A program made the translations under genes and the position numbers. DNA of 64,000 nt from Mustelus asterias (Eukaryota): NCBI RefSeq assembly GCF_964213995.1, contig NC_135804.1, positions 68,200,001-68,264,000 of the forward strand, read 5' to 3'. Every line of letters begins with the position of its first letter. Within the stretch, counting starts at the first letter, position 1. The notes under the pieces are model-generated. The model had not been told where the DNA came from. It saw only the letters and a program-made list of their open reading frames with translations, and did not search any database. Shown piece by piece: positions 3,262 to 64,000 of the stretch.

Positions 3262-4156
3262 GTAAAACGCGCAAATGTTCTACCCCATGCTCTGTGGTAA
3301 TATTTTTCTTACCTTTAAAACAGGCGCCTTTTGAAATGGTCCACAATGATAATTGTCAGAATGAGAATCACGAGGAATCCTAATACAAAACGAGGAATCA
3401 GAGCAACGTGGAGCCTGTGAACTAACATACAGGAATTACAGGAATAATCTGTTCATTATACGTGGCCTGTTTCGGCTATAATAAAATGAGACAGACAAAT
3501 TCAGAATTTAAGAACGGGAATGAAATAAGTTGACCCATAATTTCAGTGTCTCTAATTACAATAGGATCGGCACTCTGTATGTGAATTTTGAATCAAGAAG
3601 GGAGGAAAATATTTATGTTCCGCCATACGTTCCCATTGTATTAAAAGCGGGAGAGTTGAGTTAACATAGGTAAGTCGAAGGATGAAGAAATCAGTCTGCA
3701 TAAAATCACCGATGCTCCGCGATTTGCCAAGTTCAGCAAATCCAAGCAAAATGCAATTTTGCCTCAAAGTGATATCTTATTTATATCCAACAGAGTAATC
3801 ATTTGCTAGTTACCAAATTACAGGATCACTTTTTTGAACTTGAAATATTCGCTTGACCACCACACTACACCGCACAACGCCATGTAATATTCCTCACTTT
3901 ACCTTGAAAAATACAGCTGTGGAATACTTTATTTTTGGTGAGTAACGTTAATATTCCTGGAATTAAGGTCTCAGTAGACTTGCTGGAATTAGTTGTTTTT
4001 CCTTGCTATGCGCAATTTATGCGCATATTAGAAAATATAATGATTTTAGTTGTTATATGTTTTATTTTCAGCATGTGGATCAAATTATAGGCTTCCAGAC
4101 CTTTAATAAGAATGGTAAATTGTGTCTGCAAAATGAGACATGGTTAGTAAGTTTAC

Positions 4157-7515: not shown

Positions 7516-7677
7516 TTACTGCATACTCCAACCACAACGTCCGTTTGCAGAGTTGAAATGTGTCAGTGTGAGGAGAATGACAGTTGATTTTAAGAAAGTG
7601 GACGATACCCATGAGACGCCATATAAGGACATTACTTTCAGTATCGGTGAATCGTGGTCTCTCGTCTCGTTAATAAT
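7516..7677 (-). other. Candidate stalk/TM/short-tail segment, out of phase with the C1 exon
   Basis: After acceptor tttatttacag it reads, in phase 0, IINETRDHDSPILKVMSLYGVSWVSSTFLKSTVILLTLTHFNSANGRCGWSMQ*. The phase 1 required by the C1 donor gives D-Y-stop, and the intron would be only 51 nt. Confidence 0.3.
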
Positions 7678-7728
7678 CTGTAAATAAATAATCTTAATAA
7701 AACTTGTTTGCTCCACTATTTGGCTCAC

Positions 7729-8028
7729 CTTTCCAATTTAGAACATTGAAGCTGGCATTAACCGGAATAATAAGCGTGCGATGAGTTACTTGGCACGTTA
7801 CGTAACGGTCAGTTCGTGTGACAACCAAATAGCTGAAAAGTTCATAAAGTCCTTCGGAATTTAGATATTTAAATGTATTTATCCCAGTTGCAACACGAAA
7901 GCCATCCTTGTACCAAGTTACATTGATACCATCCGGGTAAAAAGCCGCCGTTTTACACGAAATAATTAGAGACTCGGGTGTCTTATTTGCAAGTAACTCG
8001 GACTTGATGCTCAACGGAATTGGAGGAA
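7729..8028 (-). CDS. Ig C1-set exon
   Basis: Acceptor tttattttgcag|TT and donor G|gtgagc enclose 300 open nt, phase 1-1. C1 hallmarks: ISCKTAAFYPDGINVTWYKDG, GLYELFSYLVV, VTCQVTHRTL. Read-through adds GEPNSGANKFY* (stop 7694-7696). Confidence 0.95.
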
Positions 8029-9564
8029 CTGCAAAATAAAGCAGAAACAGACGCATTACAACGACTATGTTCATCTCTGCTTTGTAACCAACATTTCGCC
8101 CAGTCATTAGATTTGCACTGTCCTTAAATTTACTGTGATACTTTGCACTGACGTTCACGACGATTAGAGAGCAATTTTCTATTGCACCCTTTAAAGGGTA
8201 TAGAGAAATAGTGTGAGGAGTGCAAACAGCTGGGCATCTCTTTTATGCATTAAGTTCAATACAAAGAAAACGTGTAATGTCTTTCTAAACCATGGAATAT
8301 TCGCTCGCATATCCAATTCAATGGAAACAGACAGACAAAGTCAAATTGCGAACAAATAAATGTATTATTAAGGAAAAGTGATGAATGAGGCAGAAAAAAA
8401 TCAAACATTTGCATTGTACTAATATCTTCCTAAATTGCCAACCATAAGTAAAATCTGGACAAATGCGACTATCGTTATATTAATCGTTGCAAGAGAGACA
8501 GCAGATTAAAAACATTCTTTGCTTGAGTTCTGAATTGTTTGGACGAATTCAGTAGTTACGATTTAATTAAGTATAATACACTAACGCCTTTCCAATGCTA
8601 TCTCGGAGAGCTACGGTTTCACCGAAACGGCTAGAGAAACCGCACTCTGCGAGAAAAAAAAATCCCGATATCGTTGTTTGACTGTTCTTAGCTGGTGGAT
8701 CAAATTTGCTCCAGCATTAACAAAGGGAAGTCCTATTATGCACCGCCGTCAAATGTAAAACGAAGTCGACTCTAAAGTGGTGAAGTTTCACAAGGGGCGA
8801 ATCGATAGAAAAGGGGACAACAATTAATATTTTAATCCAGGGCACCGAAAATACAATTATAACTAATTCTCGAAATTAATGTTTGATATAATCCTATCTT
8901 AAATATGTCGCAGTTGAGTGATTTTCGAGACACTGTTGGATTTTATTTTTCAGGACTGAAAGCCTGGTGTTCAATGCAGTCTATAAAGAATCGAGAGGAT
9001 AGTTTCAAGAACAATAGTTTTCCTTCCGAACGGCTAGATTTTCATGTTGGCCGATGCAGTGATGGAAGCCAATTGGTAGTTCCATTACACAACACTTCCC
9101 AATGCATTTTATTGACTTAAATTTAAATATAAACCACAAGAGCGTAAAACGTGCTCCCAATTCGTTACATTCCGCTTTGGCGGAAAGTCAGGATCGACAG
9201 AAACTTCTTCATCAATCGAATAGCAATGGTGTTGAATTTCAGTTCTCACACACAACCCTGGATTAATTGAATTGTTATCACAGTGGAAATCGCTTTATAT
9301 CGGCTTAATATTTTCTTGTGTCTACCACCTCCCCACCGCTCCCCCCCCCCACCCCCCGCCCTTGACTTTTTATGTTATTTTGCATCACCGCATTAAGACT
9401 TCGAGTATAATTTTCAATTGTAACGCAAAGAATGGATTGATTGCAAATGTTTCTCATCAGAGCTATTGGAAAACGATAAGCAATGAACATAGTAATTTCA
9501 TACATATGCGATTTCACCTGTTATGAATTATAAAATGAATGATGTGTGGGCGATTTTCGCTTAC

Positions 9565-9885
9565 CGTAGATAACAAGCTTTGACCCAGTTCCATTTGCAA
9601 AGAGGCGATCCAGATGTTTTACTCCGCAATAATAGACCCCTGAGTCCGCGGCGTGGACTTTCAGGAGCTGAAGAGTGGCTTCACCTTTCTTCAAAAGACG
9701 AATTACTTTTCTGCTGTCCGATCGTGACTGCAGAAAGTCAGTATCGCCCAGTTTCCACCAATATATATTCACATTCGAAATATCATTAAAAAGAGGAAAC
9801 GCGCAATAAAAGGTGACGTTTTCACCTGCCAGCCGGTGAGCACTTTCGGGGGCTTGGGACACTTTTCTCTGACCATCAGCAACAT
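9565..9885 (-). CDS. Germline-joined V-J type Ig V-set exon
   Basis: Acceptor ttcctcacag|AT and donor G|gtaagc enclose 321 open nt: DVADGQRKVSQAPESAHRLAGENVTFYC...NIYWWK...ATLQLLKVHAADSGVYYCGVKHLDRLFANGTGSKLVIY. It has the B-strand Cys, C-strand Trp, DxGxYYC and a J-like GxGSxLxI strand. Confidence 0.95.
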
Positions 9886-10066
9886 CTGTGAGGAAGAAAT
9901 GCAAACAATAAGATCATCTATGGCAAAAAAGGAGAAAAAAGGAAAGATTTCGAACCGATCGGAGAGATGAGGCATGGCTGAGGGGGGTGGTGGGGGGCGG
10001 GTGGTTAGGGTGGAAGGGAGGATGTGTTCGGAGGGGGAGTGCGGTGGTAAGGCGTCAAATACTTAC

Positions 10067-10124
10067 CTGCGTGAATAATGATGAGAACATTTACACATAG
10101 ATGCAAAACAGCGTCCAGAAGCAT
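10067..10124 (-). CDS. Leader (signal peptide) exon of a V-C1 IgSF gene
   Basis: ATG at 10124 reads MLLDAVLHLCVNVLIIIHA plus 1 nt (58 nt), followed by a consensus donor G|GTAAGT. Phase 1 matches the V exon acceptor 180 nt downstream. Confidence 0.85.
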
Positions 10125-10574
10125 TTCCAACAATAGAAACTATCAGTTCGCTACTCGGTGAAACTTGAGCCTAGTTTGTTCCGAAATAGAATACAAAATT
10201 AACTCGCCAAGTTAGGTCCATGTGCTGTCCGTGTAGCGGATGAGGCAAGGCAACCGATGTGGGAACGATTAGTCCTGAGCATCATACGTAGTCAGCACAT
10301 TTGAATAATTATTCGTGAATAACCGCAGAGCTTTGTTTCTGGGCTGATCAACCTAATGGTCGACGTGGAAAACGTGACAGGAATGGATAATTAAACTGAT
10401 ATTCATAATTAAATATAAGTGGCTGATAAAATTGAAAATATTATTTCAGCACTGAATTATATTTTAAATTAGTTTAACGGGTTCACCATCATTGCTCAAG
10501 GCTAAAGATGGTGAAGTGTGCGACAAATGAAAATTGACGTGCATTCATTAAACAAATCGCATCGGGAAGGTTAA

Positions 10575-18273: not shown

Positions 18274-20956
18274 AAAACAGTTTAAAAAGGTATTTCCGGT
18301 TTTTAACGTTATTGCAGTCAGATATTTTAACAAAATCCTTGACCTACTTTTGATATTTTTACGATTTGCAGAAAGGGCAGCGACGGAGTTGACAGCTAGA
18401 ATGGTAATTTGAATGTCTGCAGAGATTCATATATAGCAAGATTTACTGTCTAAAGCTGAAGTGCAAATTGACAAAATTATGATATTATGGAGAGTCAGAA
18501 TATAGAAATAATCGTTATGTTCGTCGAAGTAGTTAGATCAAAATTTTATGCACCTTTATTACAATCTATTTCACATGGTGAATTAAGTAGACGTTTCTAA
18601 GTATCGACATTGTTGCTGTGGGCTGCCTAATATCTGTGCCTCATTTGTTCTTAACTTGCTCTACTTTTTGACACAGAGTGAAACAAGACCCTTCATTATT
18701 ATGTAATATTATTTCGATAAATCTTTAAGATTTCACAATTTATAAATATAGTGATACCTTCAACACCTGGAGTGTAAATTTGCGATTGTCTATTCATGAT
18801 CTTACTGCTGTCGCGTAGCTTCATTCAATGTAGTTTTTTTTTGTAAATGGGTAACAAGAAGTGAATAAGCTCACACGAGCTTATAGTGATCCATGAATTG
18901 CAAAGGCCACGTATCATTTCCCAAACACCGGCACGCTATCGTTCTTGAAATGCTATTCAGCAGTTGCCTTATTTTGTAATTCGTTACAGTAACATCTCCG
19001 TATTGATTATAACTTGTTTATTTTTTTTATCTAAGTTGAGTTCTCAACCTGTTCCTGTCAATTAAAATCTAGTCGTCGCAAATATAGCGGACACGTCCAT
19101 TTATCAATAATTTACATTTTTCCTCGTAATTTTGCTTTGCACTTTTCCAGTACGATCACCTGCTGTTTGTAATTGGCTGACGAATAAGATACCCAAAACT
19201 CTAAATTTGGAATACCCAGTGTTTGATCAATCTACAATAACCTCCATTCTTTTCAGTACTAAACACAATTATTCCCGATGTCTCCTGACAGAGCAGAATT
19301 TTACATGTTCCCGACCGTTGTCCTTTTTTTCTCTGGGGTGCTAGGGGAGGGGGAAGCAAAATGACATGGATGCCCATCTAAGTACCTACCCTTCCATCCC
19401 AAACTGACCCTCTAATTCTATGGATGGGCGGACGACAAAATCGCCATGTAAAAATGACAATTTAAAATCAATAACACGTCTTAGGAAGCCGACCAAACCT
19501 AATAATATAATGACCACACCATAAACCGTTAACCTCAATGAATAAAGGGCGGGAAGAAAGGGGTTGCCACTCTCCGGTGGCCGGCTTTTGCCGACAGCGG
19601 GTCGGCGCCTTTAGATTGATCACCAACTTCCTTCGTACCGCTCCTTTTCTTAGCCCCTTCCGCCCACCTCTAATCCCATGCCACCAACCCAAACCCATCT
19701 ACCCTCCCCCCTCCACGCCCCCCCCCCCTCCACGCCCCCCCCCCTCACCCACACTCCACCCCCGCACGCCATGCACTGCCCTTAACCTGAAGACTTACCT
19801 GAAAAGGGGAGTCCTCGGCTTCGGGCTCTTCTTCTCAGTTAAGGTGGCGGCAGCTGCCATCACCCCATTACCAGCGCTGCCAGGGCTGGTAGAACTGCCG
19901 GTCCATTGGATTAGTAGGTAGCTCCAGAGGGCGGGCGCAAAGATGCATTTGGTCTTCGTTAATGAACCTTCTAGTGCTTTAATGCTGAGGGATTTTTCGG
20001 CGTGTTGTCACTCCGCTTCACGCCGACAAGTTTTGAGGGAGGCGCGAGGAATGGGCACGTGCCTTCTGCCCACATAGCAATCGGGCACCGTTTGGAATTG
20101 GTCTCTCTCTATCCATTGCACAGGCGTGTTGGCATCACGTGCAACATTCATATATATTTCCGCTATTTTCAAGTGCAAATAATTGCTGCATAAGCCGATA
20201 AGGAAACGATCTCGTCGGAGCTCTGTGGAACCCCTATCGAAAGAACAATCCAGTCAAAATAAAATATCTTGCCAACCTTTGCTTATTTTCAGTGAGGGAA
20301 TAGTGCATCCCATTCCCCTGGGATTCAATGGTCTTTTACTTGTCTTGCCGGTCAAATGTTTCTTGAAATTAGGACGACTATATCAAACTCACCAATCTCT
20401 TCGACGTGTTGTTTTATTTCCTCGAAAAATTCAATCAAAGTCGTCAAACGCACAATTGTCTCAACCATCGCTCTGGGTACCCTTAATTAATCCGTGTCAT
20501 TCGAAAACACAATGAGTAACGCGCCACAAAATGACAAATTTATACACTGACGGGTCTGTCATTGCTGCCGCGAATGTTTTGTTTTAACAATACTACTATG
20601 ATAGAGGTACCATATTCCTTCTGAAAGACGCCTAAGGCGACAGAGAATTGGAAAATGATGTGCGGATCATTTGCTCTCTTCTCCGTTGTTTCTGTTTGTA
20701 ACCTTATAAATTTCATCCGCAGCATCACACCACGGTTATCTGCACAGCAAAAATGATATTTCATGTATTTCCATATCTCGTACTTCATCTGGAAAATTAC
20801 ACTACAGTCATCATGATGGCAGTGTGTCTGGATTTTACATTACTTGCACGATTTGAAATGTTTTTCCCAACGCAGGGCATGGCAAATGTAACATTAAAAG
20901 CAGCCGTCCTAAACGGGTTGTTGCGGGTCATTATTTTAGATATTCGTTTCGCAATC

Positions 20957-21750
20957 TGAGGAGGCGGAGTAAAGGAAAGAGATAGCGAATCCGATTAATT
21001 GGTACGACAACAATAATCTCTCCCACAATGCCAATAAAAGGAAGGAGATATTCATCGATTTCAGGAAGTGTGCGTTAATGGGGATGAAGTGGAAGTCTTC
21101 CACAACTTCAGGTTTCAAGGTTTTCAGATCACCAACAACCTGGCCTGGTTCCTCCAAGCCGACGCTATGGTTACGAAAGCCTACCAACGCATTTACTTTC
21201 TCAGGAGGCGAGGAAATTCGGCATGTCCGCTGCGAATCTCAGTAACGTTTACACATGCACCATTGGAAACATCCTTTCCGATTGTATCACAGCTTCGTAT
21301 GGCTTCTGCTCTATCCAAGACCGTAAGAAACTCCAAAGGGCCATGAAGAAGCCCAGTCCATCACGCAGACCATACTCACATCCATTGACTCCATCAACAC
21401 TTCCCGCTGCCTCGGAAACGCAGCCAGCTAAATCAAAGGCCGCGAGCACCCGCATAACCAAAGACCCCATGCATCCCAGACAAGCACTTTTCCACCAACT
21501 CGATTGGGAGCAAGATAGAAAAGTCTGAGTTCAGGTACTAACCGACTCAGAACAGTTTCTTCCCTGCTGCCATCAGACTTTGAAATGGACCTGCCTCCTA
21601 CTGAGTTGATATTTCTCCACTCCCTAGTTGTGACAGTTACACTACATTCTGCACCCTCTCTGTTAAAGGGGTGATTTGTCTGTGTACAGCGCAAAATCCA
21701 AAACTTTTCTCTTTATACAAACACAGGTGACAATACTAAAACAAATCAAC
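20957..21750 (+). mobile_element. Rex1/Babar LINE 3' fragment
   Basis: KEIFIDFRK, KAYQRIYFLRR, YTCTIGNILSDCITASYG; its 3' UTR is similar to 4320-4540. Confidence 0.85.
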
Positions 21751-22699
21751 ATGAAATAACAAATAATACAACGAATACCACTGTTTTCTGCTATCCGTAT
21801 ATTAGTTTCATGTCCATGTTGCCATTGTAACTTTAATGCGGTGGTTTTCAATGAATCTAGGAAAGTTAATATCTGGCATCTTATAATAAGTCTGCCAAGC
21901 GTTCTTATATACAACACTACCACCATGAACCAATTCATCGAAATGACTGGAATGTCATGATTTAGCAATAAAGTCTTGGAACTTGCTCTATGCTGATCCT
22001 ATCACCCTCATCCCAAGTGGTCCATTAATCACAGTGACGGTAGTGACTATAGTGACCATAATGACCAGCGAAACGTTATATTTTCTCACTTTTGTTAATG
22101 AAATCTTACGGAGCAGCTTTGAAGTCATTCCGACGGCCCAGTCCGTATTTTTTGTGCAATTCGGGTTATCCTTAGTCATGTTCATGACCGTCTGATGGAT
22201 GAAATGGTGCTTCCACACAATAAAGATGGCAGCATTTTGGTAACGTAAAGAGGACAACAACAGTAAAATGTTTTGTTTCGGGCAAGAGTTCAAATCCAGC
22301 CAAGGCAACCCTTGGAATTTAAATTCAGATAAGGAATCATGCTGCAGTTCAAAACTAATCATGAACATATATTCGGTTTGGGGGTTAGCAGACTGAGTGG
22401 AAAGTGAGAACTTGGTGCAATTATGAATTTCTTGGGGAGGCTTAATATGCACTTGTCAAGTTCGAGTGGAACTACCAACGATTCGGATTCTTAAATTAAA
22501 ATCGCTGTTCAGTATATAGATATCGAATATTTACTTTGTTAGCTCTGTTACGAAGGGTCGGTTGATCTCCTGTCCGAGAACGAACACTCAACCACACAAA
22601 GAGAAGTACCTCCCTTCACAATCTATTAAAGTCTGTATAAGAAGGGATAATGTCAGCATTTCAGCAGCCTGGAGTGACCAACTCGAAATAACTACCTGA

Positions 22700-25600
22700 G
22701 ACTGTCTTTGCCTCTCATACATTGTTTCAGTCTGTGTACCGCTTGCACCTACTTCTCTTCAGTACAGAACAAACACTATCTTTTCTAAAAGAGCGATGAA
22801 ATTTTACAATTTCTAGCATTTCAGAAGATTTTTTGATAATTTGGCAGATACTAATTTCACAATACCTTCACCACTTTAGAAAAGAATGAACCTTCATCAT
22901 GAAAAGTTGGCTTCATTTTTAAAAAACTCATGTTAAAACATATGCAATAACATTTTCATGACCCACAACATGTACAATCTGTAAGTTAAATGCTTGTAAC
23001 AAGTGACACTTTATTTATCTAATTAACAGTAAACAGGTTAACGAAACTATTAACAAACCAAATAAAACATTATGCTGACAGAATTCTGTTTAAATAAATA
23101 CAATTCCCACTTATTAAAAAAATGAAATATTTCGTCACACTCAAAATACAACTTGTTGTTATCTTCCGGAATCTTGTTTATTCTTTATCTTCACTTTTCA
23201 CTATCTTCTGTTGGCATCTTTGTAATTAAGATTAGGTTTTTGTTTAAGATATAAATGTGGCTATTACACTGTTAGATGACAGTTGCTGGCTATGTGCATT
23301 TCTCTCAGAGCAGAGCTAAGCTGTTACTCAGCAGGTGACAGGCGTTCTTCTACCGTTTGTGCCCTTGATCCTGTCTTTTATACTCCTAATGATATACCAA
23401 AATCCCTACAATAGGATTGGTTTGCAGGTTATCAAAACATCAAATTCAAATCTGATATGTTGCTGCTATTCAAATGCCTATCTCAAATTGATTGGTTAAA
23501 ATTCAAAAAGATGTTCTGATTCAGATGCCTGAAGTCTGTTACCAAGTCAACCCTGCTGTCTTTGCCTCTCATGCATTGTTTCAGTCTGTGTACTGCTTGC
23601 ACTTACTTCTCTTCAGTACAGAACAAAAACTACCTTTCCTAAAAGAACCATGACATTTAAAAAATTTCTAGCATTTTAGAAAACTTTTTCATCATTTGGC
23701 AAACACTAATTTCACAACACCTTCACCCCTTCAGAAAAGAATGAACCATCATCATGAAAAGTTGGCTTCATTTTTAAAAAGCTCACGATAAAACAAATGC
23801 AATAACATTTTCATGACCCACAACATGTACAATCTGTAAATTGTACATGTAACATGTAGCTTGTAACATAAGACTCCAACAAAATAGTCTGGCCATCTTA
23901 TCCTTTAATCTTTCCAGAAATGTCAAAGGATTCTGATCAGTATACACAATCAATTCTGATTAATTGTTTGTAACATAATCATTAAAATGTTGTAAAGATA
24001 TTACTAAAATTATTAAATACTTTTCAAAATTGAAATATTTTGTCAGGCAGATATTGTGGGGTTTTTTCGAAAATTAGGCGATTAGCATTTCAATTCAAAA
24101 ATTATTCTCCTGTAACAGCACAGCTCTAACACTTACATTGCTGACGTCAATAGTGACTTTAAATGTTTTCAAGAAGTTTGGTGTGGCTAAAACAGGTTCG
24201 GTGGTTAACACTGCTTTCAAATTCTGATATGCCTCTTGGTATTGTTCTGTCCACCAAAATTTCATGTTCTTTTTTAACAAGGTCGTCAACAATGCCACTG
24301 GCTGCTAAAATTTCATACGTACCTTTGTAGAAGCCGCTCAATCCCAAAACTCACTGCACTTTCTTCTTCAATGATGGTCTTTGAAATTCCTCGATGGCCT
24401 TCGTCTTCAGATTTCTCAGTCTCATCCATCCGTATCCCATATTGTGTTCTAAAAATATCACTTCTGCCTCCGCAAATTCTTTTTTGCCAAGTTTATGACC
24501 AATTTTGTGTTTCGTAGTCTCTCAAAGAACTCTGCCAAATGCTCCATGTGATCTTTCCAAGAACGATTAAAAATCACTAAGTCACCAATGTAAACATCGC
24601 AATTCGTCAATCTGGCAACAACTCTCTTCATAAAGGTAGCGGGTGCATTTTTCATCCCAAAGGGCATTACTTTAAATTGACATATCCCAATTGGGGTTAG
24701 AAAAGCAGAAACTTCTTTAGCTCTCTCTGACAAAGTTACTTGCCAATAACCGTGAACTAAGTCCAACTTTGTGATGTAAGTAGTTTGTCCAGCTTTTCCA
24801 CACAATCCTCCAGCCTTGGAATTGGCTATGAATCAGATTTAGTCATAGTGCTAACCTTGCGATAATCTATGCAGAATTGTTGAGTACAATCAGGTTTGAG
24901 GACCAACATTATCGGCTAAGTTCACTTGCTTTGACTTGGCTCTCTGATATCTTCATGTAGCATTGCTTTCACTTCCTTCTGAACCTGAACTGCTTTGGGA
25001 GGCATTCGCCTTTAGGGTATTATTTTATAGGAACAGCATTCTCTACATCAACCTCATGTACTATATCTTTAGTCCTCCCCATTGTCTTTTTACATAGGAC
25101 CTCATAGCCCTGTAACACGGCTTTAAATTCAGTTCTCTGGTCCTGAGGCAGGTAACTCACTACCCCTATTCCATTCCTTAAGTTCTTCTTCATTATTCAA
25201 TTTATTCTGAGGCACATCAAAATCTACATCATCTGGATTTGATTCCTCACTCTGAGTGGCAGTATCTAATACTTGTTTCTCCGGTTCCCTGTCCCTGTTA
25301 TAATAGTCTTTTAGCATGTTCACATGACATACCCTATGCATTTTTTTCCTATCTGTCATCTTTACCAGATAATTCACCTGACTATATTTCGCCTCAATCT
25401 GAGAACCACTGGCCACTAAACCTGGCCAACAAGGGATCTCCTGCCATTGGTAATAGCATGAATACTTTATCCCCATGGGCAGACGTAGAATTTTAGATTT
25501 CTTATCTGCTTCTTGTTTCATTAGTTGCTGTGCCATTCACAAATGTTGGGTAGCTAATTCATCCATTCTGTTTAATCTTTCTTTCACCTGAGCTATATAA

Positions 25601-47345: not shown

Positions 47346-49149
47346 TAAGGCTTGTGGTCCTGTTCAATTTGCTGACTCTTAATATATTTTTCTTTTTTTT
47401 CAACTAAAATGCATTGTTCCAGTTTTGTTTTATATCAAGTGTCGATTTCTGTCGACGTCAGGGAAGATTGTTATAAGTAATTGCGGAGGTCCAAGCCGTA
47501 TTGTTTCCTGCATATAACAGAGTATATAGCTGTTAAATTGTACATTCTCAGCTTGGATACGAAACACGTCAACTCTAGCTGCAAATGATGCATCATCAAT
47601 CTGGCCTATCCTACAAATGTTACATCGATCTAAAATGATCATTTCCTCTTCCGGCACAGAAGTACACAGATTCTCATGTGGAATTCTACAGAAAGGGTTC
47701 GACTTATGAATACGGAGAGCAGTAGCTGGGCATTAATTGCAGATGTGTGAGTTAACCCTGATTCCCGCAAGCGAACCAGCAAAGTCAAGAAATAAAACAG
47801 AACCAGCAGAAACGGTCAGTTCATCTGCAGTTCCGAAAGAAGCGAGCTTTGCATTCTAACTCTTTTCACCAGTTGGGAGTCATTTGACCAATTGGGGGTT
47901 TACGCACTTTTCATCTCTGACTAACGTTAATAGTAAACCGATTACAATATGAACAAAATGTTTGAATTTGCCCTTAGCGAGCTTAATTTCACCCTTCCAA
48001 CAGTCTAATACAGAGGTTGGGCTGACATAGGATAATACCTCCGCCCGTTACAATTTAGTTTGCAAGTTTGTCCATGACAAATTTAATTGCTCAGTTGTCT
48101 TCCCAATATTCAATGTAAATTTCAAAGTCAACTACGGGAATCTCGAGGAAGCGAATCAAGCCGACAACATCAAAATGTACCGAATACATCAGCTGGAATT
48201 TGGAGAAAAAGTCAAATTCTTTGGAGCTATTTCTACGAGCTTTCTCACATTCATCTGATGTAAATGTGATAATTTACACAAGGTTAGAATTCACGCTAAT
48301 AGCTAGGCGGTTTCTTTGTCCGTCTAACGTCGAAATTTCGAAAGTCGGCAACCCTGGGATGTAGAGATGGATTACGGGGAAAGAAAAAAACACTAACTGG
48401 TGTTCGGTCTCTCGCACTTTAAACAGTTCTAAATCATTTCAGAGTGTTAACTGTTAGATATTGCCTGATTTCGCTGTTGTAATTCTGGTAAACTCTCTCA
48501 GTAACACCGTGAAACTGACAACTCTTTAGTGGCATTATCACATGTTTAGTCAAATGCATAAATCCAGAATGTATTGGCAGTCATTTCCTGTTGCTCTACA
48601 GGGGTACGGTTTTGCCTGTTATTTCATAAGATCGCACCTTTTCAAACGAATCGTTTTGAATTGATCCGCAAAGACAATGGCCAACGTCAAAATGATCAAA
48701 GTGGCCGATATATATCGGGTTAAATAACCAAACTGGGAAATCGTATACACCCTCTTAGGCGTAAATAAAACAGATTTAAATTGCTATTTGTTCTGCAGAA
48801 TATCCGCATAACAACTATATATGAATAAACGGATGAGTTGTTTTCATAACTATGAAGTCAGCTATTAATTCATTTCTATAGTACTTGATCATAATTTTGT
48901 AAAATGTCTACGGCACTACAATAAATATTATTTCATGGTCTTTACAAAATTCGTAACAGCATAATCGTCACAGCACCAGAATTTCGTGGTTTTACTGTTA
49001 ATATTAATTTATAATTATTCTACGGATTGCTTTCCAATTTAACAATGCTGTGGTACTCTCTGGGAAAACACAAAAAATACAAAACAAAATACTGAGGGGA
49101 TGTGTCAAAATTAATAAGCTCGGAAGACCTATGAAAAACCGCATCAATT

Positions 49150-51547: not shown

Positions 51548-51828
51548 CATGAATGGCAAGCATTCCATTTCTGTTTACGTCACTCCGATGTTTGACCCCA
51601 CAGTAATATACCCCAACATGTTGCAAACAGACATCAAGTGAAAGGAACCCTGGCCTTTCCACAAAAAATATCGCCTCCTCCTGTCTGAATTTGGCTGCAT
51701 AAATGTACTTTCGCCGGGTCTCCGCCAGTAAATATTCACTTCAGAATTAGTGGAAAAATGTGGGAGCGTGAAAGCGAAGGTACCATTTTCACCAATTATC
51801 ACAATCTTTTGATGGAGGGTTTGGAAGC
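51548..51828 (-). pseudogene. V-exon pseudogene paralogous to the 9565-9885 exon
   Basis: Reads GENGTFAF...EVNIYWRRPGESTFMQPNSDRR...KGQGSFHL, then a frameshift, then VGVYYCGVKHRSDVNRNGMLAIHG|gtag. GVYYCGVKH is identical to the intact gene. The first Cys is lost (TTC) and the J strand is shortened. Confidence 0.85.
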
Positions 51829-54459
51829 CTTGGAACAGGACAGCGATAATAACTCAAAAATGTAAGAGATCAGACTCCCAGGAAATCAAAGATATCTCTC
51901 CTAATGGAAAATTGATGCAAACCTGAGATAGGTGATAGAATAGGAATAGACAGAAACAATACCTGTGGGTAAATATCACGATACGCTGAAGTATGGCACA
52001 AGCAGCTGTATTCCGTAAGTAAGTTGCTATTTGCTGTAAACCAATAGGAAATGCTATTTCCAGCTCCCTTCGTGGGTGAACAATTTCGTCCAAATGGCTG
52101 CCAATTATGCAATAATGAAGGGCGCACGACATATTAAAAGCAACCATGCACAGTGACGAACGAAAAGATGGAATATCTAAGTTTTGCCCGGAGCATTGTA
52201 TGATTTGAACATCACACAATGCAAGTTTTCGCTGACGTACAATTGAGACCACACCGTTTTACCCGGAGTATCGGTTAGCGACATATTAAACCGCAATAAA
52301 TTACTTAAAAGACCGTTTCCTGCATTACAGCATGTGTAAAACTAATTGTTTTAGAACAATGAAAATGTTGAGACACTGAATGCAAAACGACTTGGTGATT
52401 AATAACATTATAGACTATTATACTGATTTTCATAGCGATTAAATTAAGCCCGAAGCTACCGTTTCAATGCGAGGCAAAGCAAACTGTCCAGATACGCTGT
52501 CATGCTCATACGTCCGTTCTTGGACTGGTACATTCTTCCTGAGAAGACCAACGCAAACTAAAGGAATGGTGTAACTTCCGGTCCGAAATGCCGGGGCACA
52601 TTGCATATACCTCAGACATGTCGGTGGGACAACACGGAAGTCCCGACGCATGCGCGTTTGGTCGAGGTTATGAAAGCGACCGGTCCTGAAGCGCTATACT
52701 GCAATTGTGCCAAAACCTCCAGCACCTGCGCTGTAGTTCGGTGAATTTTTGCGCTTATTTATTTGCACTTTTAGTTTTTGGCCCGGCAGCAGCGCATAAA
52801 GGCAGCAGACATTCTTTGGGTTTTTTTTTTCTTGTCCATGTTTCATAAATTGTTTGATAAGTAAAGCACAGAAAATGTAAATATTTTTTTACCTTTTTTA
52901 CAACATTGTCATGAAAACTAATTGCATTAAAATTTTTCGTCATATAAAACAAGTGGAAACAAAAGACAAAATGCTGGAAAGTCTCAGCAGGTCCGGCAGC
53001 ATCTGTAAGGAGAGACAAGAACGAACGTTTCGAGTCCAGATGACTCTTTGTCAACGCTAAAAGGCATAGAAAGTGGGAGATATTTATACTGCAGTGTAAG
53101 GGAATGAAAGATGATCCATAGCAATAAAGCAATAGGAAAGGCTGCTAATGGCAGTCCATAGAGAGAATGAAAGGTGTGCATGGCCAAACGGCAGAGAAGC
53201 TGAAATCAGAGGGTAATCTGTAACAGATGAAGAAGTGGGGAGAGCAGGGGGGAATAGGTGGGAGAGAGGTAAAATTGAGAAAAAGGAGGAAAGGGAAAAC
53301 AAAGCGGGAGAAAAGGTAAGGCTGAGCACCTGAGGTCTGTGCGCAATCAGGACCCTCACCTTCTCGTTGCCATTTTAACGCACGATCTTTCTCTCATGCC
53401 CACATATCTGTCCTTGGCCTGCTGGAGAAACAGCATCTCATCTTCTGGCTAGGCACATTACAACTTTCCGGTCTCAACATCGAATTTAACAACTTCAGAT
53501 GATTAGTTCTACCCCACCTCAATCCTTTTGTTTACATTTCACTTTATGTTTAACTGTTCTCTACCTTTTACTTGTTTACTGTTCTTTCCCCCACAAACGT
53601 TCCCCTATTTTAGCCCCCGTTTCCTTACGTTTTCTCCCCCCTTGCTTCCCCTTTCTTTCTTTTTCTCAATTTTACCTATCTCCCACCTATTCTCCCCCTC
53701 TCCCGCCCATATCATCATCTGTCACAGCTTACATCCGAGTTCAACTTCTCAGCCATTTGGCCATTCAATTTTATTCGTTCCATGGACGGCTATTGGCAGC
53801 TTTTCCCATTATTGTTGTGGCTATGCAATGTTTTATTCCCTCACCCTGCAGTATAGATATGTCCCACTTTCTGTGCATTTTAGCTTTGACAAAGGGTCAT
53901 CTGGATTAGAAACGTCAACTATTTTTTCTCATTACAGATGCTGTCAGACCTGCTGAGATTTTCCAGCATTTTCTCTTTTGGTTTCAGATTCCAGCATTCT
54001 CAGTAATTTGCTTTTATCCAGTGTTGAACTCACTGCTACTTCTCTTCCAGGAATGCCTACCCTGAAGGAGTACCGCTCTTCTTTCCGACAGGATTTTGGC
54101 ATGTCTCTACACAACACCAACCCCCCCCCCCCCCCCCCCCCACCCCGCCCCCCCCCCCCCCCCCCCACCCTGGCCCGCCACCCCCACCACCACCCTATCC
54201 ACCTTAATTGCTTTCCATTTATCTCTCAGTGTTGGAAAAGGTATTCACCAAGACTCGCTTCCACAGCATTTCCTTCCTCAGTGACTGTCTTCGCCTCTGA
54301 CTTACCCCAAGTGGATTTCAACTCAAATTCCACCCCACACGTAACCTCCAGGATTACAGATATCTCCAGGATATCCATCATTCTTCGAACTGCTGTTCTC
54401 GCTGCATCCTGAAAGCTACACTCAGTGCCATGCGTAACCACATGAAGACATTCGACATC

Positions 54460-63437: not shown

Positions 63438-63740
63438 TTATGGATTTTTCCAAAAAGTAATCTGTGTCGCTATTATGGCTAGAAAACGATTCATAAGACA
63501 AAGCAATACCAATTTCTGCATTTGTCTGCTCATGCACATTGTCATGTAAAATTTTGGCGACAGAATCACAATGAAGTTGTATTGGCTCACATGAGTTTTG
63601 ACACATTGATCCCTATATTTAGAAATGTTAGATGATGTTTCCTCTCGTCGTAGATGGTCTCTGCCGTTAGCTTTTAGATTATTCTCTGGTAACTGAACAT
63701 ATCCTGATCTCTGGTTCTTCAATTTAGCCGTTTCTTTTTC
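63438..63740 (-). other. Candidate cytoplasmic exon with an ITIM-like SGYVQL motif
   Basis: Good acceptor ttgttcgtctcttgcag|G. Phase 0 reads EKETAKLKNQRSGYVQLPENN..., a hydrophilic start. No upstream exon was identified in the window. Confidence 0.3.
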
Positions 63741-64000
63741 CTGCAAGAGACGAACAATTCTAATGCGGCATATGTGAGATCGGTGTCTACTGTGGCGTGT
63801 TTTATCTACAAAGCAAGTGGTGGGAAATCCAATTAGCCCGTTTGCGTCTTCTATTCTCTTGCTAATCAAAGAGTCAATTACAATTCAGAATGTTGACATG
63901 TAAAGCGAAATTTCTCCTGCCCCAATGATGAGCGTTTTATTATTGTTTCTTCTCTACTTACATGGGCATACACTGTCACATCCTCTTGGCACTTTAGTCC

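What the first reader, a model, noticed from the sequence alone, without database searches (positions are those of the whole stretch)
7694..10124. Intact non-rearranging leader-VJ-C1 antigen-receptor-like gene
Seen: three open exons with canonical phase-1 GT-AG junctions; a V domain whose J-like diglycine strand (NGTGSKLVI) is already in the V exon; a true C1-set domain; no RSS. Known: C1 domains are largely restricted to Ig/TCR/MHC/B2M/tapasin/SIRP/B7-H6-type molecules, and germline VJ exons occur in NKp30, SIRP and non-rearranging shark receptors, which are discussed as models of the pre-RAG receptor. Inference: this is a member of a chondrichthyan VJ-C1 receptor family that may be uncharacterised. 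The V has unusual features (NIYWWK; Asn instead of F/W before GxG, creating an N-glycosylation site).
Basis: partly seen in the sequence, partly recalled or inferred. Interest (0 to 1): 0.85.

Follow-up and report, generated by a model that had tools for sequence, protein, structure and literature searches.

The report
Shark VJ-C1 receptor, short-tailed form
This is an intact shark gene for a cell-surface receptor whose outer part is built like an antibody light chain but needs no gene rearrangement, one member of a large and apparently undescribed receptor family of sharks, rays and chimaeras.

Summary
On the minus strand lie a leader exon (10124-10067), a V exon with a built-in J-like strand (9885-9565) and a C1-set exon (8028-7729). 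All are open, phase 1 and have canonical splice sites, and there is no RSS. The gene does not end there: a fourth exon at 3421-3315 encodes an Arg-bearing transmembrane helix and an 8-residue tail.

A RefSeq model from Mustelus asterias, auto-named "NCR3LG1-like" (P0163), uses these VJ, C1 and TM exons letter for letter.

The gene belongs to a large family found only in chondrichthyans in my searches. Some paralogs carry long tails with ITIM-like motifs; others carry this short-tail Arg-TM form.

The family scores about equally against Ig light chains, SIRP-alpha and UrIg2 and is an orthologue of none.

My reading is that this is the adaptor-coupled, activating partner of a SIRP-like paired-receptor family. 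That function is inferred, not shown.

Expression, dN/dS and MHC linkage could not be tested. Six literature searches found no description of the family. First readers of this scan flagged similar VJ-C1 genes elsewhere in this genome.

The parts
10067..10124 (-). Leader exon: ATG at 10124-10122, 19 hydrophobic codons plus one base (phase 1), donor GT at 10066-10065
   Evidence: 10 of 19 residues match the leader of the catshark orthologue P0164. The RefSeq model P0163 does not use this exon.
9565..9885 (-). VJ exon: V-set domain with both cysteines, the WWK motif, Y-Y-C, and a J-like N-G-T-G-S-K-L-V-I strand in the same exon. Sequons at residues 22 (NVT) and 97 (NGT).
   Evidence: Identical to P0163 over 107 of 107 residues. 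70-75% identical to five galeomorph orthologues.
7729..8028 (-). C1-set exon, phase 1 at both ends, three sequons, no C-terminal cysteine
   Evidence: Identical to P0163 over the exon. 60-75% identical to the orthologues.
7694..7728 (-). Read-through of the C1 donor: 11 further codons, then TAA. This is a possible secreted tail if the intron is retained. The like stretch is coding in the two catshark models.
   Evidence: Status as coding in this species not shown.
3315..3421 (-). TM/cytoplasmic exon. The acceptor TTAG| gives a phase-1 junction codon Val. Then come a stalk, a helix with Arg near its outer end, Asp-His at the inner end, the 8-residue tail, and TAA at 3317-3315. A donor GT follows at 3312-3311.
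   Evidence: 35 of 35 residues identical to the C-terminus of P0163. 50-76% identical to orthologues. Predicted as a helix in the orthologue model.
20612..24429 (-). Three upstream exons (24429-24322, 20910-20839, 20743-20612) that P0163 uses in place of the leader. They lie among transposon ORFs and add 100 residues without a signal peptide.
   Evidence: I take them for a model artefact or a chimeric 5' end; not tested.

Best explanation
This is an intact four-exon gene (leader, VJ, C1, TM/short tail) of the starry smooth-hound. It encodes a glycosylated type I membrane protein. The ectodomain has the V(J)-C1 layout of an antigen-receptor chain but is germline-encoded, so no rearrangement is needed. 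It is the short-tailed member of a multigene family that my searches found only in chondrichthyans. Other members of that family carry the same ectodomain on long tails with repeated ITIM-like tyrosine motifs. I infer that this form signals through a transmembrane Arg that recruits an ITAM adaptor of the FcR-gamma/CD3-zeta/DAP12 kind. That would make it the activating partner of the inhibitory paralogs, as SIRP-beta is to SIRP-alpha. The ligand is unknown. The family-wide N-G-T sequon sits where Ig and TCR J segments have the Phe/Trp of the V-V interface. This suggests the V domain works unpaired. Shown here: gene structure, domain types, family membership, and conservation of the TM exon and its Arg. 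Inferred: adaptor coupling, activating role, unpaired V.
For: Structure and domains. P0163 contains the VJ, C1 and TM exon products identically. Orthologues of 265-289 aa with the same short tail occur in Scyliorhinus (two species), Carcharodon, Cetorhinus and Chiloscyllium. Their identity to the window is 70-75% in V, 60-75% in C1 and 50-76% in TM. The TM Arg is kept in 8 of the 9 short-tail sequences I read: P0163, P0164, P0166, P0001, P0160, P0069, P0005 and P0168. P0162 has Gln there. A strict pattern finds the Arg-TM type in 7 of 84 signature-bearing stored proteins. In the AlphaFold model of P0164 the Arg lies in the fourth position of helix 244-268. Inhibitory paralogs: 20 of 54 family proteins examined have ITIM-like motifs after a TM segment. 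The long-tailed P0003 is nearest to SIRP-alpha clusters by language-model features, at 0.96 with 205 shared features. Family hallmarks in 31 aligned members: W62 and W63 are invariant, and N117 is at 90% or more.
Against: There is no expression evidence: no RNA run holds the stretch, and a RefSeq model is not proof of a transcript. That model starts at other upstream exons and lacks a signal peptide. The Arg sits at the edge of the hydrophobic core and may merely snorkel. One orthologue has Gln there, and the inner Asp is Val in the two catsharks. No adaptor gene was looked for. Short tail plus V-C1 is also the layout of ligands such as B7-H6, which ties for best structural match at Z 15.8. 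The role of the N-glycan is inference; the model's coordinates were not inspected. The second haplotype shows 3 non-synonymous changes to 1 synonymous in the C1 exon. That is too few to weigh but is not a sign of strong constraint.
Confidence: 0.6

Rival explanations
1. It is a ligand or non-signalling surface molecule of the B7/B7-H6 kind, read by a receptor on another cell. On this view the short tail simply means no signalling, and the Arg is a membrane-edge residue.
For: RefSeq names this gene and its white-shark orthologue 'NCR3LG1-like'. B7-H6 (4zso_E) ties for the best non-redundant structural match: Z 15.8, 190 residues aligned, 25% identity. PD-L2, B7-H3 and butyrophilins lie within about one Z unit. 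With the V exon alone, B7-H3 and PD-L1 are among the PDB hits at E 3e-05 to 5e-04. An NCR3LG1 cluster scores 0.95 in the Atlas.
Against: The V domain has a J-like G-x-G strand. From recall, not tested here, B7 V domains lack one. The C domain scores 45.4 bits on C1-set against 18.1 on CD80-like C2-set and 13.8 on the butyrophilin C domain. Paralogs with the same ectodomain carry ITIM-like tails, which marks receptors. The TM exon with its Arg is conserved across divergent members. The structural ranking is a tie among many V-C proteins.
Confidence: 0.17
2. It is a direct relic of the pre-RAG antigen receptor and belongs with UrIg/UrIg2. It would then work as a dimeric, antibody-like recognition molecule rather than as a paired innate receptor.
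For: UrIg2 V-C1-C2-C3 (9dmx) is the second-best PDB chain for the family profile: 130 bits in all, 56.4 bits for V-C1. It shares the single VJ exon, split leader and C1 domains described for UrIg and UrIg2 (PMC12227049, sections 4 and 7 read). Foldseek's best matches are all Fab light chains at E 2e-16.
Against: UrIg has three C domains and is secreted only. Nurse-shark UrIg2 has nine C domains (PMC12227049). This gene has one C1, and tblastn with this gene's own C1 exon found no second match in the window at E up to 10. The UrIg2 V-C1 stretch scores below Ig lambda (73.0) and SIRP-alpha (68.9). There is no membrane-proximal cysteine for a disulfide-linked dimer. The conserved sequon at the J bulge argues against Ig-like V pairing, though that is inference.
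Confidence: 0.1
3. The gene is intact by sequence but not used: a recently silenced copy in a decaying cluster, or one made only as a secreted form by read-through of the C1 donor.
For: The window also holds a broken V copy and a broken ITIM-tail exon of the same family. No RNA run was found. The read-through tail is open for 11 codons, and the like stretch is coding in the catshark models. The RefSeq model lacks the leader.
Against: All four exons are open with canonical splice sites. V identity to orthologues in three shark orders is 70-75%. The listed differences of the second haplotype include no stop or frameshift in exons; 23 further differences were not shown.
Confidence: 0.1
4. It is a germline-joined immunoglobulin light-chain gene.
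For: The leader-VJ-C1 layout without RSS is that of the germline-joined shark IgL genes (recalled). Ig lambda gives the best single V-C stretch at 73.0 bits, and light chains are the best Foldseek matches. Several paralogs are auto-named 'immunoglobulin lambda-1 light chain-like'.
Against: It has a TM exon used in the RefSeq model. Identity to light chains is only 21-28%. There is no C-terminal cysteine. WWK stands where light chains have W-Y-Q-Q, and Asn where J has Phe (alignment). Paralogs carry ITIM-like tails.
Confidence: 0.02

Closest known systems
SIRP family (SIRP-alpha inhibitory, SIRP-beta activating)
   Same: Non-rearranging V domain with a J-like G-x-G-T/S-x-L strand, followed by a C1-set domain. 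The family profile aligns end to end with SIRP-alpha d1-d2 at 68.9 bits, and d3 adds 50.0 bits. Members are paired: long tails with repeated tyrosine motifs, and short tails with a basic TM residue. SIRP-alpha clusters are the nearest named neighbours of the long-tailed P0003, at 0.96. A 'SIRBL' cluster ranks second for the short-tailed P0164, at 0.95. RefSeq names many members SIRP-alpha-like.
   Different: It has one C1 domain, not two. It has Arg near the outer end of the TM, where SIRP-beta has Lys (recalled). Its hallmarks are WW[K/R] and N-G-T-G. The Ig lambda score equals or exceeds the SIRP score, so there is no clean orthology. CD47 binding is untested. That the tails resemble SIRP-alpha's motif by motif is my recollection of the human sequence, not a test.
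UrIg and UrIg2 (non-rearranging shark VJ-C genes; PMC12227049)
   Same: Cartilaginous-fish genes with a single-exon VJ, a split leader and C1-type domains. UrIg2 is the second-best PDB chain for the family profile.
   Different: UrIg is VJ plus three C domains, secreted, and a disulfide-linked homodimer made in liver. Nurse-shark UrIg2 has nine C domains. This gene has one C1, a TM helix and no membrane-proximal cysteine, and it belongs to a multigene family with ITIM-like tails. The paper mentions neither SIRP nor ITIM (0 occurrences each).
Immunoglobulin light chains, including germline-joined shark IgL
   Same: V(J)-C1 two-domain layout and exon plan. Ig lambda gives the best single-stretch profile score at 73.0 bits, and Fab light chains give the best Foldseek matches.
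   Different: It is membrane-anchored, 21-28% identical, has no H-L cysteine and no rearrangement signals, and carries a sequon in place of the J-segment Phe.
B7-H6 (NCR3LG1), the name RefSeq gives this gene
   Same: V plus a C1-like domain, TM and short ectodomain. The structural match is Z 15.8 over 190 residues at 25% identity.
   Different: The match is a tie with Rst, Neph1, PD-L2, B7-H3 and butyrophilins. The J-like strand and the ITIM-like/Arg-TM pairing point to a receptor. No sequence test against B7-H6 itself could be run, as no stored B7-H6 sequence was available.
NKp30 (NCR3) and other Arg-TM activating receptors
   Same: Germline VJ-type V domain, short tail and TM Arg, so it may work alike through an ITAM adaptor. 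This comparison rests on recall.
   Different: NKp30 has a single V domain and no C1. It did not appear among the best 60 PDB hits of the V exon.

Membership tests
SIRP family | N-terminal V domain with a J-like strand encoded in one exon | tested here: met
   The family strand aligns with SIRP-alpha's S-G-A-G-T-E-L-S-V.
SIRP family | Three Ig domains: V followed by two C1-set domains | tested here: not met
   One C1 exon, then the TM exon. tblastn with this gene's own C1 exon finds no second match in the window at E up to 10. Family members of 224-377 aa have V-C1 only.
SIRP family | Closer to SIRP than to other V-C1 families (orthology) | tested here: not met
   Best-stretch bits are Ig lambda 73.0, SIRP-alpha 68.9, Ig kappa 68.8 and UrIg2 56.4. 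The Atlas ties SIRB-like, NCR3LG1, TAPBPL-like and Ig kappa-like at 0.94-0.95 for P0164.
SIRP family | Binds CD47 | not testable with these tools
   Needs a binding assay.
UrIg/UrIg2 | VJ followed by three or more C1-type domains; UrIg has a secreted form only | tested here: not met
   Features from PMC12227049. This gene has one C1 and a TM exon.
UrIg/UrIg2 | Linked to the MHC (UrIg) or to the IgH/TCR-alpha-delta complex (UrIg2) | not testable with these tools
Supplementary gene tables of PMC10751288 and PMC12227049 could not be seen.
Rearranging antigen receptors / germline-joined IgL | RSS flanking V, or, for joined genes, a secreted V-C chain with a C-terminal cysteine for the heavy chain | tested here: not met
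   No RSS. TM exon present. The C1 exon ends without a cysteine.
B7-H6 (NCR3LG1) | B7-type V domain without a J-like G-x-G strand (recalled) and specific similarity to B7-H6 | tested here: inconclusive
   The G-x-G strand is present. The structural Z of 15.8 is tied with many V-C proteins. No direct sequence comparison was possible.
NKp30 (NCR3) | A single VJ domain with no C domain | tested here: not met
   C1-set exon at 45.4 bits.
PRARP (chicken non-rearranging VJ-C genes; Fu et al. 2019, seen only as a reference in PMC10751288) | Sequence relationship to PRARP V and C domains | not tested
   The paper is not held (one search lists only the citing paper), and no PRARP sequence was available. 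None of the 20 non-signature hits looked up is from a bird: 19 are chondrichthyan, reptile or teleost, and the organism of P0131 was cut off.
Paired activating/inhibitory Ig-like receptors (functional class) | Near-identical ectodomain type on ITIM-tailed and on short-tailed, charged-TM members within one gene family | tested here: met
   Signalling itself was not tested.

The most novel reading that the evidence does not exclude
This family, rather than the secreted UrIg line, would be the surviving membrane-signalling branch of the pre-RAG VJ-C1 receptor. That ancestor would have been an innate, paired (ITIM / adaptor-coupled) receptor with an antigen-receptor ectodomain, present before holocephalans and elasmobranchs split. 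SIRPs would be its remnant in bony vertebrates. The charged-TM, adaptor-coupled way of signalling used by TCR and BCR would then have existed on a VJ-C1 chain before rearrangement arose.
Probability: 0.12. Interest if true: 0.85.

Novelty: new variant of a known kind. Interest (0 to 1): 0.52.

Why it matters
Single-exon VJ genes joined to C1 domains are sought as models of the receptor that the RAG transposon split. Two shark examples, UrIg and UrIg2, were recently reported on that ground (PMC12227049). This gene shows that sharks, rays and chimaeras also keep a large family of membrane VJ-C1 receptors. That family has inhibitory and putative activating forms and sits about equally far from light chains, SIRPs and UrIg2. 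If it is mapped relative to the MHC and the Ig/TCR complex and placed in curated V and C1 trees, it bears on two questions. One is whether the ancestral VJ-C1 chain was a signalling innate receptor. The other is when SIRP-like paired receptors arose. As a single gene it is one ordinary member. The family is the item of interest.

Tried and rejected
I rejected the TM proposed in another first-reader note at 7516-7728 (s1-894178, 'Lys-containing TM one base out of frame'). The real TM exon lies 4.3 kb further on at 3421-3315, is in frame, matches P0163 in 35 of 35 residues and matches the orthologues.

RNA evidence: the look-up of sequencing runs with kind rna listed 3 runs, none on record as RNA. 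The junctions therefore remain untested.

Profile scores against PDB chains stand in for it. Whole-chain E-values there favour chains with many C1 domains, so I compared single stretches only. B7-H6's score could not be read, as it was not among the 60 rows shown.

Structure: an AlphaFold model of the orthologue P0164 (pLDDT 88.0, pTM 0.73) gave light chains by Foldseek and a broad tie by VIA-align. Neither settles the family.

Literature: six searches found nothing on this family. The UrIg J Immunol 2023 paper and the B7H6/NKp30 2012 paper are not held. The shark NCR3 paper (recalled) and the PRARP paper were not found. Supplements were closed; the gene tables of PMC10751288 and PMC12227049 may list these genes.

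The joined step: I searched the window's gene exon by exon (V exon; C1 exon) and never joined the exons. Whole-protein analyses used database proteins by id.
Full report
THE OBSERVATION.

- The ATG at 10124 opens 19 hydrophobic codons plus one base, ending in the donor CAG|GTAAGT.
- The next exon, 9885-9565, is open for 106 codons. It has the two cysteines of a V domain, W-W-K in the C strand, Y-Y-C, and a G strand N-G-T-G-S-K-L-V-I before the donor ACG|GTAAGC.
- The third exon, 8028-7729, is open for 99 codons and ends in AAG|GTGAGC.
- All junctions are phase 1 and both acceptors follow pyrimidine tracts.
- Pfam scores the second exon as V-set (E 1.5e-07, 32 bits, cut-off 26). It scores the third as C1-set (E 1.1e-11, 45.4 bits, cut-off 21), well above CD80-like C2-set (18.1) and the butyrophilin C domain (13.8).
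- No RSS-like heptamer-spacer-nonamer and no exact heptamer lies in 9300-10200 on either strand.
- Contigs of run X1 match the window without a difference over 7646-8416 and 9439-10200. X1 and X2 are one sample and may be the assembly's source, so this checks the letters and is not an independent individual.

THE GENE IS LONGER THAN THE FINDING. A hydrophobicity scan of the minus strand below 7760 found one strong candidate near 3400. Read in phase 1 from the acceptor TTAG| at 3423-3422, it gives:

- a junction Val;
- a short stalk;
- a hydrophobic helix with Arg near its outer end and Asp-His at its inner end;
- eight further residues and TAA at 3317-3315.

The RefSeq protein P0163 (Mustelus asterias, auto-named 'natural cytotoxicity triggering receptor 3 ligand 1-like', 342 aa) confirms this. 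It contains the products of the VJ exon (107 of 107 residues), the C1 exon (identical over the exon) and this TM exon (35 of 35). So the window is from that species and the annotation pipeline joins C1 to this exon.

The TM suggested by another first-reader note at 7516-7728 is therefore not the one used.

P0163 does not use the leader. It starts in three exons at 24429-24322, 20910-20839 and 20743-20612, among transposon ORFs, and has no signal peptide. The catshark orthologue P0164 begins with a leader that matches the window's in 10 of 19 residues. I take 10124-10067 for the true first coding exon.

Read-through of the C1 donor adds 11 codons before a stop at 7694. The two catshark models include the like stretch as coding. 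A secreted or extended isoform is therefore possible but not shown.

RELATIVES. I searched exon by exon and did not join the exons. Whole proteins were used only as database entries.

- The V exon, scored against 1.84 billion representatives, found 231 proteins at E up to 0.001 and 82 at E up to 1e-10.
- Of the 150 listed, 68 have WW[K/R], 64 have WW[K/R]...C...G-x-G, and 50 have N-G-[S/T]-G.
- The 10 best single-V hits I looked up are all chondrichthyan: Carcharodon, Heptranchias, Mobula, Heterodontus, Mustelus, Hemiscyllium/Chiloscyllium and Callorhinchus.
- They carry five kinds of automatic name: NCR3LG1-like, SIRP-alpha-like, tapasin-related-like, Ig lambda-1 light chain-like and uncharacterised.
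- A profile of 31 members found 21 proteins among 8000 scored candidates, all chondrichthyan.
- In each species the members listed lie on a contig of one length, which fits one chromosome per species.
- In the 31-sequence alignment both Trp of WW, the four domain cysteines, the first Gly of G-x-G and the His of the C1 F strand are invariant. The Asn before G-x-G is kept in 90% or more.
- Of 20 hits without the signature that I looked up, 4 are chondrichthyan. Of the remaining 16, 12 are turtle or squamate proteins (many with several V domains), 3 are teleost, and one organism name was cut off. I saw no orthologue outside cartilaginous fish, within the reach of these searches.

TWO KINDS OF MEMBER.

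- Of 54 family proteins examined, 20 have ITIM-like motifs after a TM segment. These recur as L/V-x-Y-A-x-L and T-E-Y-A-x-L/I.
- A smaller set has the short tail and the TM of this gene. A strict pattern finds it in 7 of 84 signature-bearing stored proteins.
- By eye, 8 of 9 short-tail sequences keep the Arg; Chiloscyllium P0162 has Gln.
- The short-tail orthologues of this gene are 265-289 aa. Their identity to the window is 70-75% in V, 60-75% in C1 and 50-76% in TM, across Carcharhiniformes, Lamniformes and Orectolobiformes.
- For comparison, the paper on UrIg2 gives about 80% for UrIg V and 50-60% for UrIg2 V between elasmobranchs (PMC12227049, section 7).

WHAT IT IS CLOSEST TO. The family profile against all PDB sequences gives these scores for a single V-C1 stretch:

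| Chain | Bits |
| --- | --- |
| Ig lambda | 73.0 |
| SIRP-alpha d1-d2 | 68.9 (d3 a further 50.0) |
| Ig kappa | 68.8 |
| UrIg2 V-C1 | 56.4 |

Whole-chain E-values rank by the number of C1 domains and should not be read as kinship.

- The V exon alone hits kappa V domains (E 1.6e-07), then B7-H3, IgNAR V, PD-L1 and pIgR at E 3e-05 to 5e-04.
- The C1 exon alone hits Ig constant domains, best a lambda C at 26.7 bits.
- By language-model features the long-tailed P0003 is nearest to SIRP-alpha clusters (0.96, 205 shared features).
- The short-tailed P0164 ties among an unnamed V-C1 cluster, 'SIRBL', NCR3LG1, tapasin-related-like and Ig kappa-like at 0.94-0.96.
- An AlphaFold model of P0164 built on 50 aligned sequences (pLDDT 88.0, pTM 0.73) shows two beta-sandwich domains, a disordered stalk and a helix at 244-268.
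- Foldseek's best matches to that model are all Fab light chains (E 2e-16, 21-28% identity).
- Against 48,161 cluster representatives, Rst D1-D2 and B7-H6 lead at Z 15.8. PD-L2, B7-H3, butyrophilins, NCAM and others lie within one to two units.

The family is therefore a V-C1 lineage of its own. It works most like the SIRPs and is not an orthologue of any family I could test.

HOW IT PROBABLY WORKS. Shown: it is a type I membrane glycoprotein with five sequons, a germline VJ-C1 ectodomain, a conserved Arg-bearing TM and almost no tail, in a family whose other members carry ITIM-like tails.

Inferred: the Arg pairs with the acidic TM residue of an ITAM adaptor, so this form activates where its long-tailed paralogs inhibit. 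An Arg a few residues into the helix from outside resembles, as far as I recall, the FcR-gamma-coupled receptors.

The N-G-T sequon replaces the J-segment Phe/Trp that packs in the V-V interface of Ig and TCR, and no membrane-proximal cysteine is present. I therefore expect an unpaired V. The fairly high V conservation suggests a conserved ligand, perhaps a self ligand.

Against this reading:

- There is no transcript evidence.
- The Arg lies at the edge of the hydrophobic core and is Gln in one orthologue.
- A B7-like ligand role is not excluded.

POLYMORPHISM. Contigs of X2 carry a second haplotype.

- In the C1 exon it differs at four places: three change the residue (T47A, Y66S, N94Y) and one does not.
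- In the leader it gives I15V.
- It lacks 13 bases in intron 2 at 8050, some 20 bases before the acceptor.
- None of the listed differences breaks the frame, but 23 differences were not shown.

SURROUNDINGS. The window is mostly transposon remains. It also holds three relics of the same family:

- a V copy at 51860-51561 without the first cysteine and with a frameshift, closest to the Mustelus paralog P0022;
- an Arg-TM-like stretch at 48723-48655;
- an ITIM-tail exon at 63802-63638 with two stops.

First readers of this scan flagged VJ-C1 genes 0.17 Mb and about 9 Mb before this window and on other pieces of the genome. One note describes a tail-to-tail ITIM / Arg-TM pair. I did not check those notes.

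KNOWN OR NEW. PMC12227049 (sections 4 and 7 read) and PMC10751288 (passages read) describe UrIg, UrIg2, NKp30 and PRARP as the non-rearranging VJ genes of interest. Neither mentions SIRP (0 occurrences each), and the word ITIM is absent from PMC12227049. Six full-text searches found no paper on this family. Several relevant papers are not held, and the supplements were closed. The proteins are in RefSeq under automatic, mutually inconsistent names. I rate it a new variant of a known kind: a paired Ig-like receptor family on an antigen-receptor-type VJ-C1 ectodomain. This gene is one ordinary, intact member.

Noticed in passing
window 51561-51860 (-): Decayed V exon of the same family. It has no first cysteine (T-F-A-F-T-L), a frameshift before Y-Y-C-G-V-K-H, and no G-x-G. 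It is closest (62% over 60 residues) to the Mustelus paralog P0022.
   Followed up: partly
window 48655-48723 (-): Open stretch resembling the Arg-TM exon (9 of 23 residues identical, with Arg near the start and Asp-Gln-Phe-Lys at the end). It lies 3 kb downstream of the decayed V. No C1 exon was found between them by tblastn.
   Followed up: no
window 63638-63802 (-): Relic of a cytoplasmic exon with an L-T-Y-A-A-L-E-L motif and two in-frame stops, matching the tail of the long-tailed P0003. The rest of that gene, if any, lies beyond the window's end.
   Followed up: partly
window 7694-7728 (-): The 11 codons read through the C1 donor resemble the stretch that the two catshark models include as coding between C1 and TM. 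By my count from the sequences, about 7 of 11 residues match S. torazame P0166. That is more than I would expect of an intron, so there may be an alternative donor or a secreted tail.
   Followed up: partly
window 20612-24429 (-): The RefSeq model P0163 starts in three exons here, next to a gypsy-type reverse-transcriptase ORF (24458-24805), instead of the conserved leader exon. This is likely a chimeric or mis-modelled 5' end.
   Followed up: partly
window 8050 and 7747-7888; leader 10082: Second haplotype in run X2: a 13-base deletion about 20 bases upstream of the C1 acceptor, 3 non-synonymous and 1 synonymous differences in the C1 exon, and I15V in the leader.
   Followed up: partly
P0002, P0008, P0025, P0031, P0117-P0145 (one search hits; not in the window): Turtles and squamates have proteins with several tandem V domains, under assorted automatic names such as pIgR-like, titin-like and A33-like. 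Their V domains are the nearest non-chondrichthyan matches to this V exon (28-35% identity).
   Followed up: no
window 9320-9380: G-rich low-complexity tract in intron 2 that collects hundreds of unrelated contigs (depth over 1000). It is a repeat, not part of the gene.
   Followed up: no
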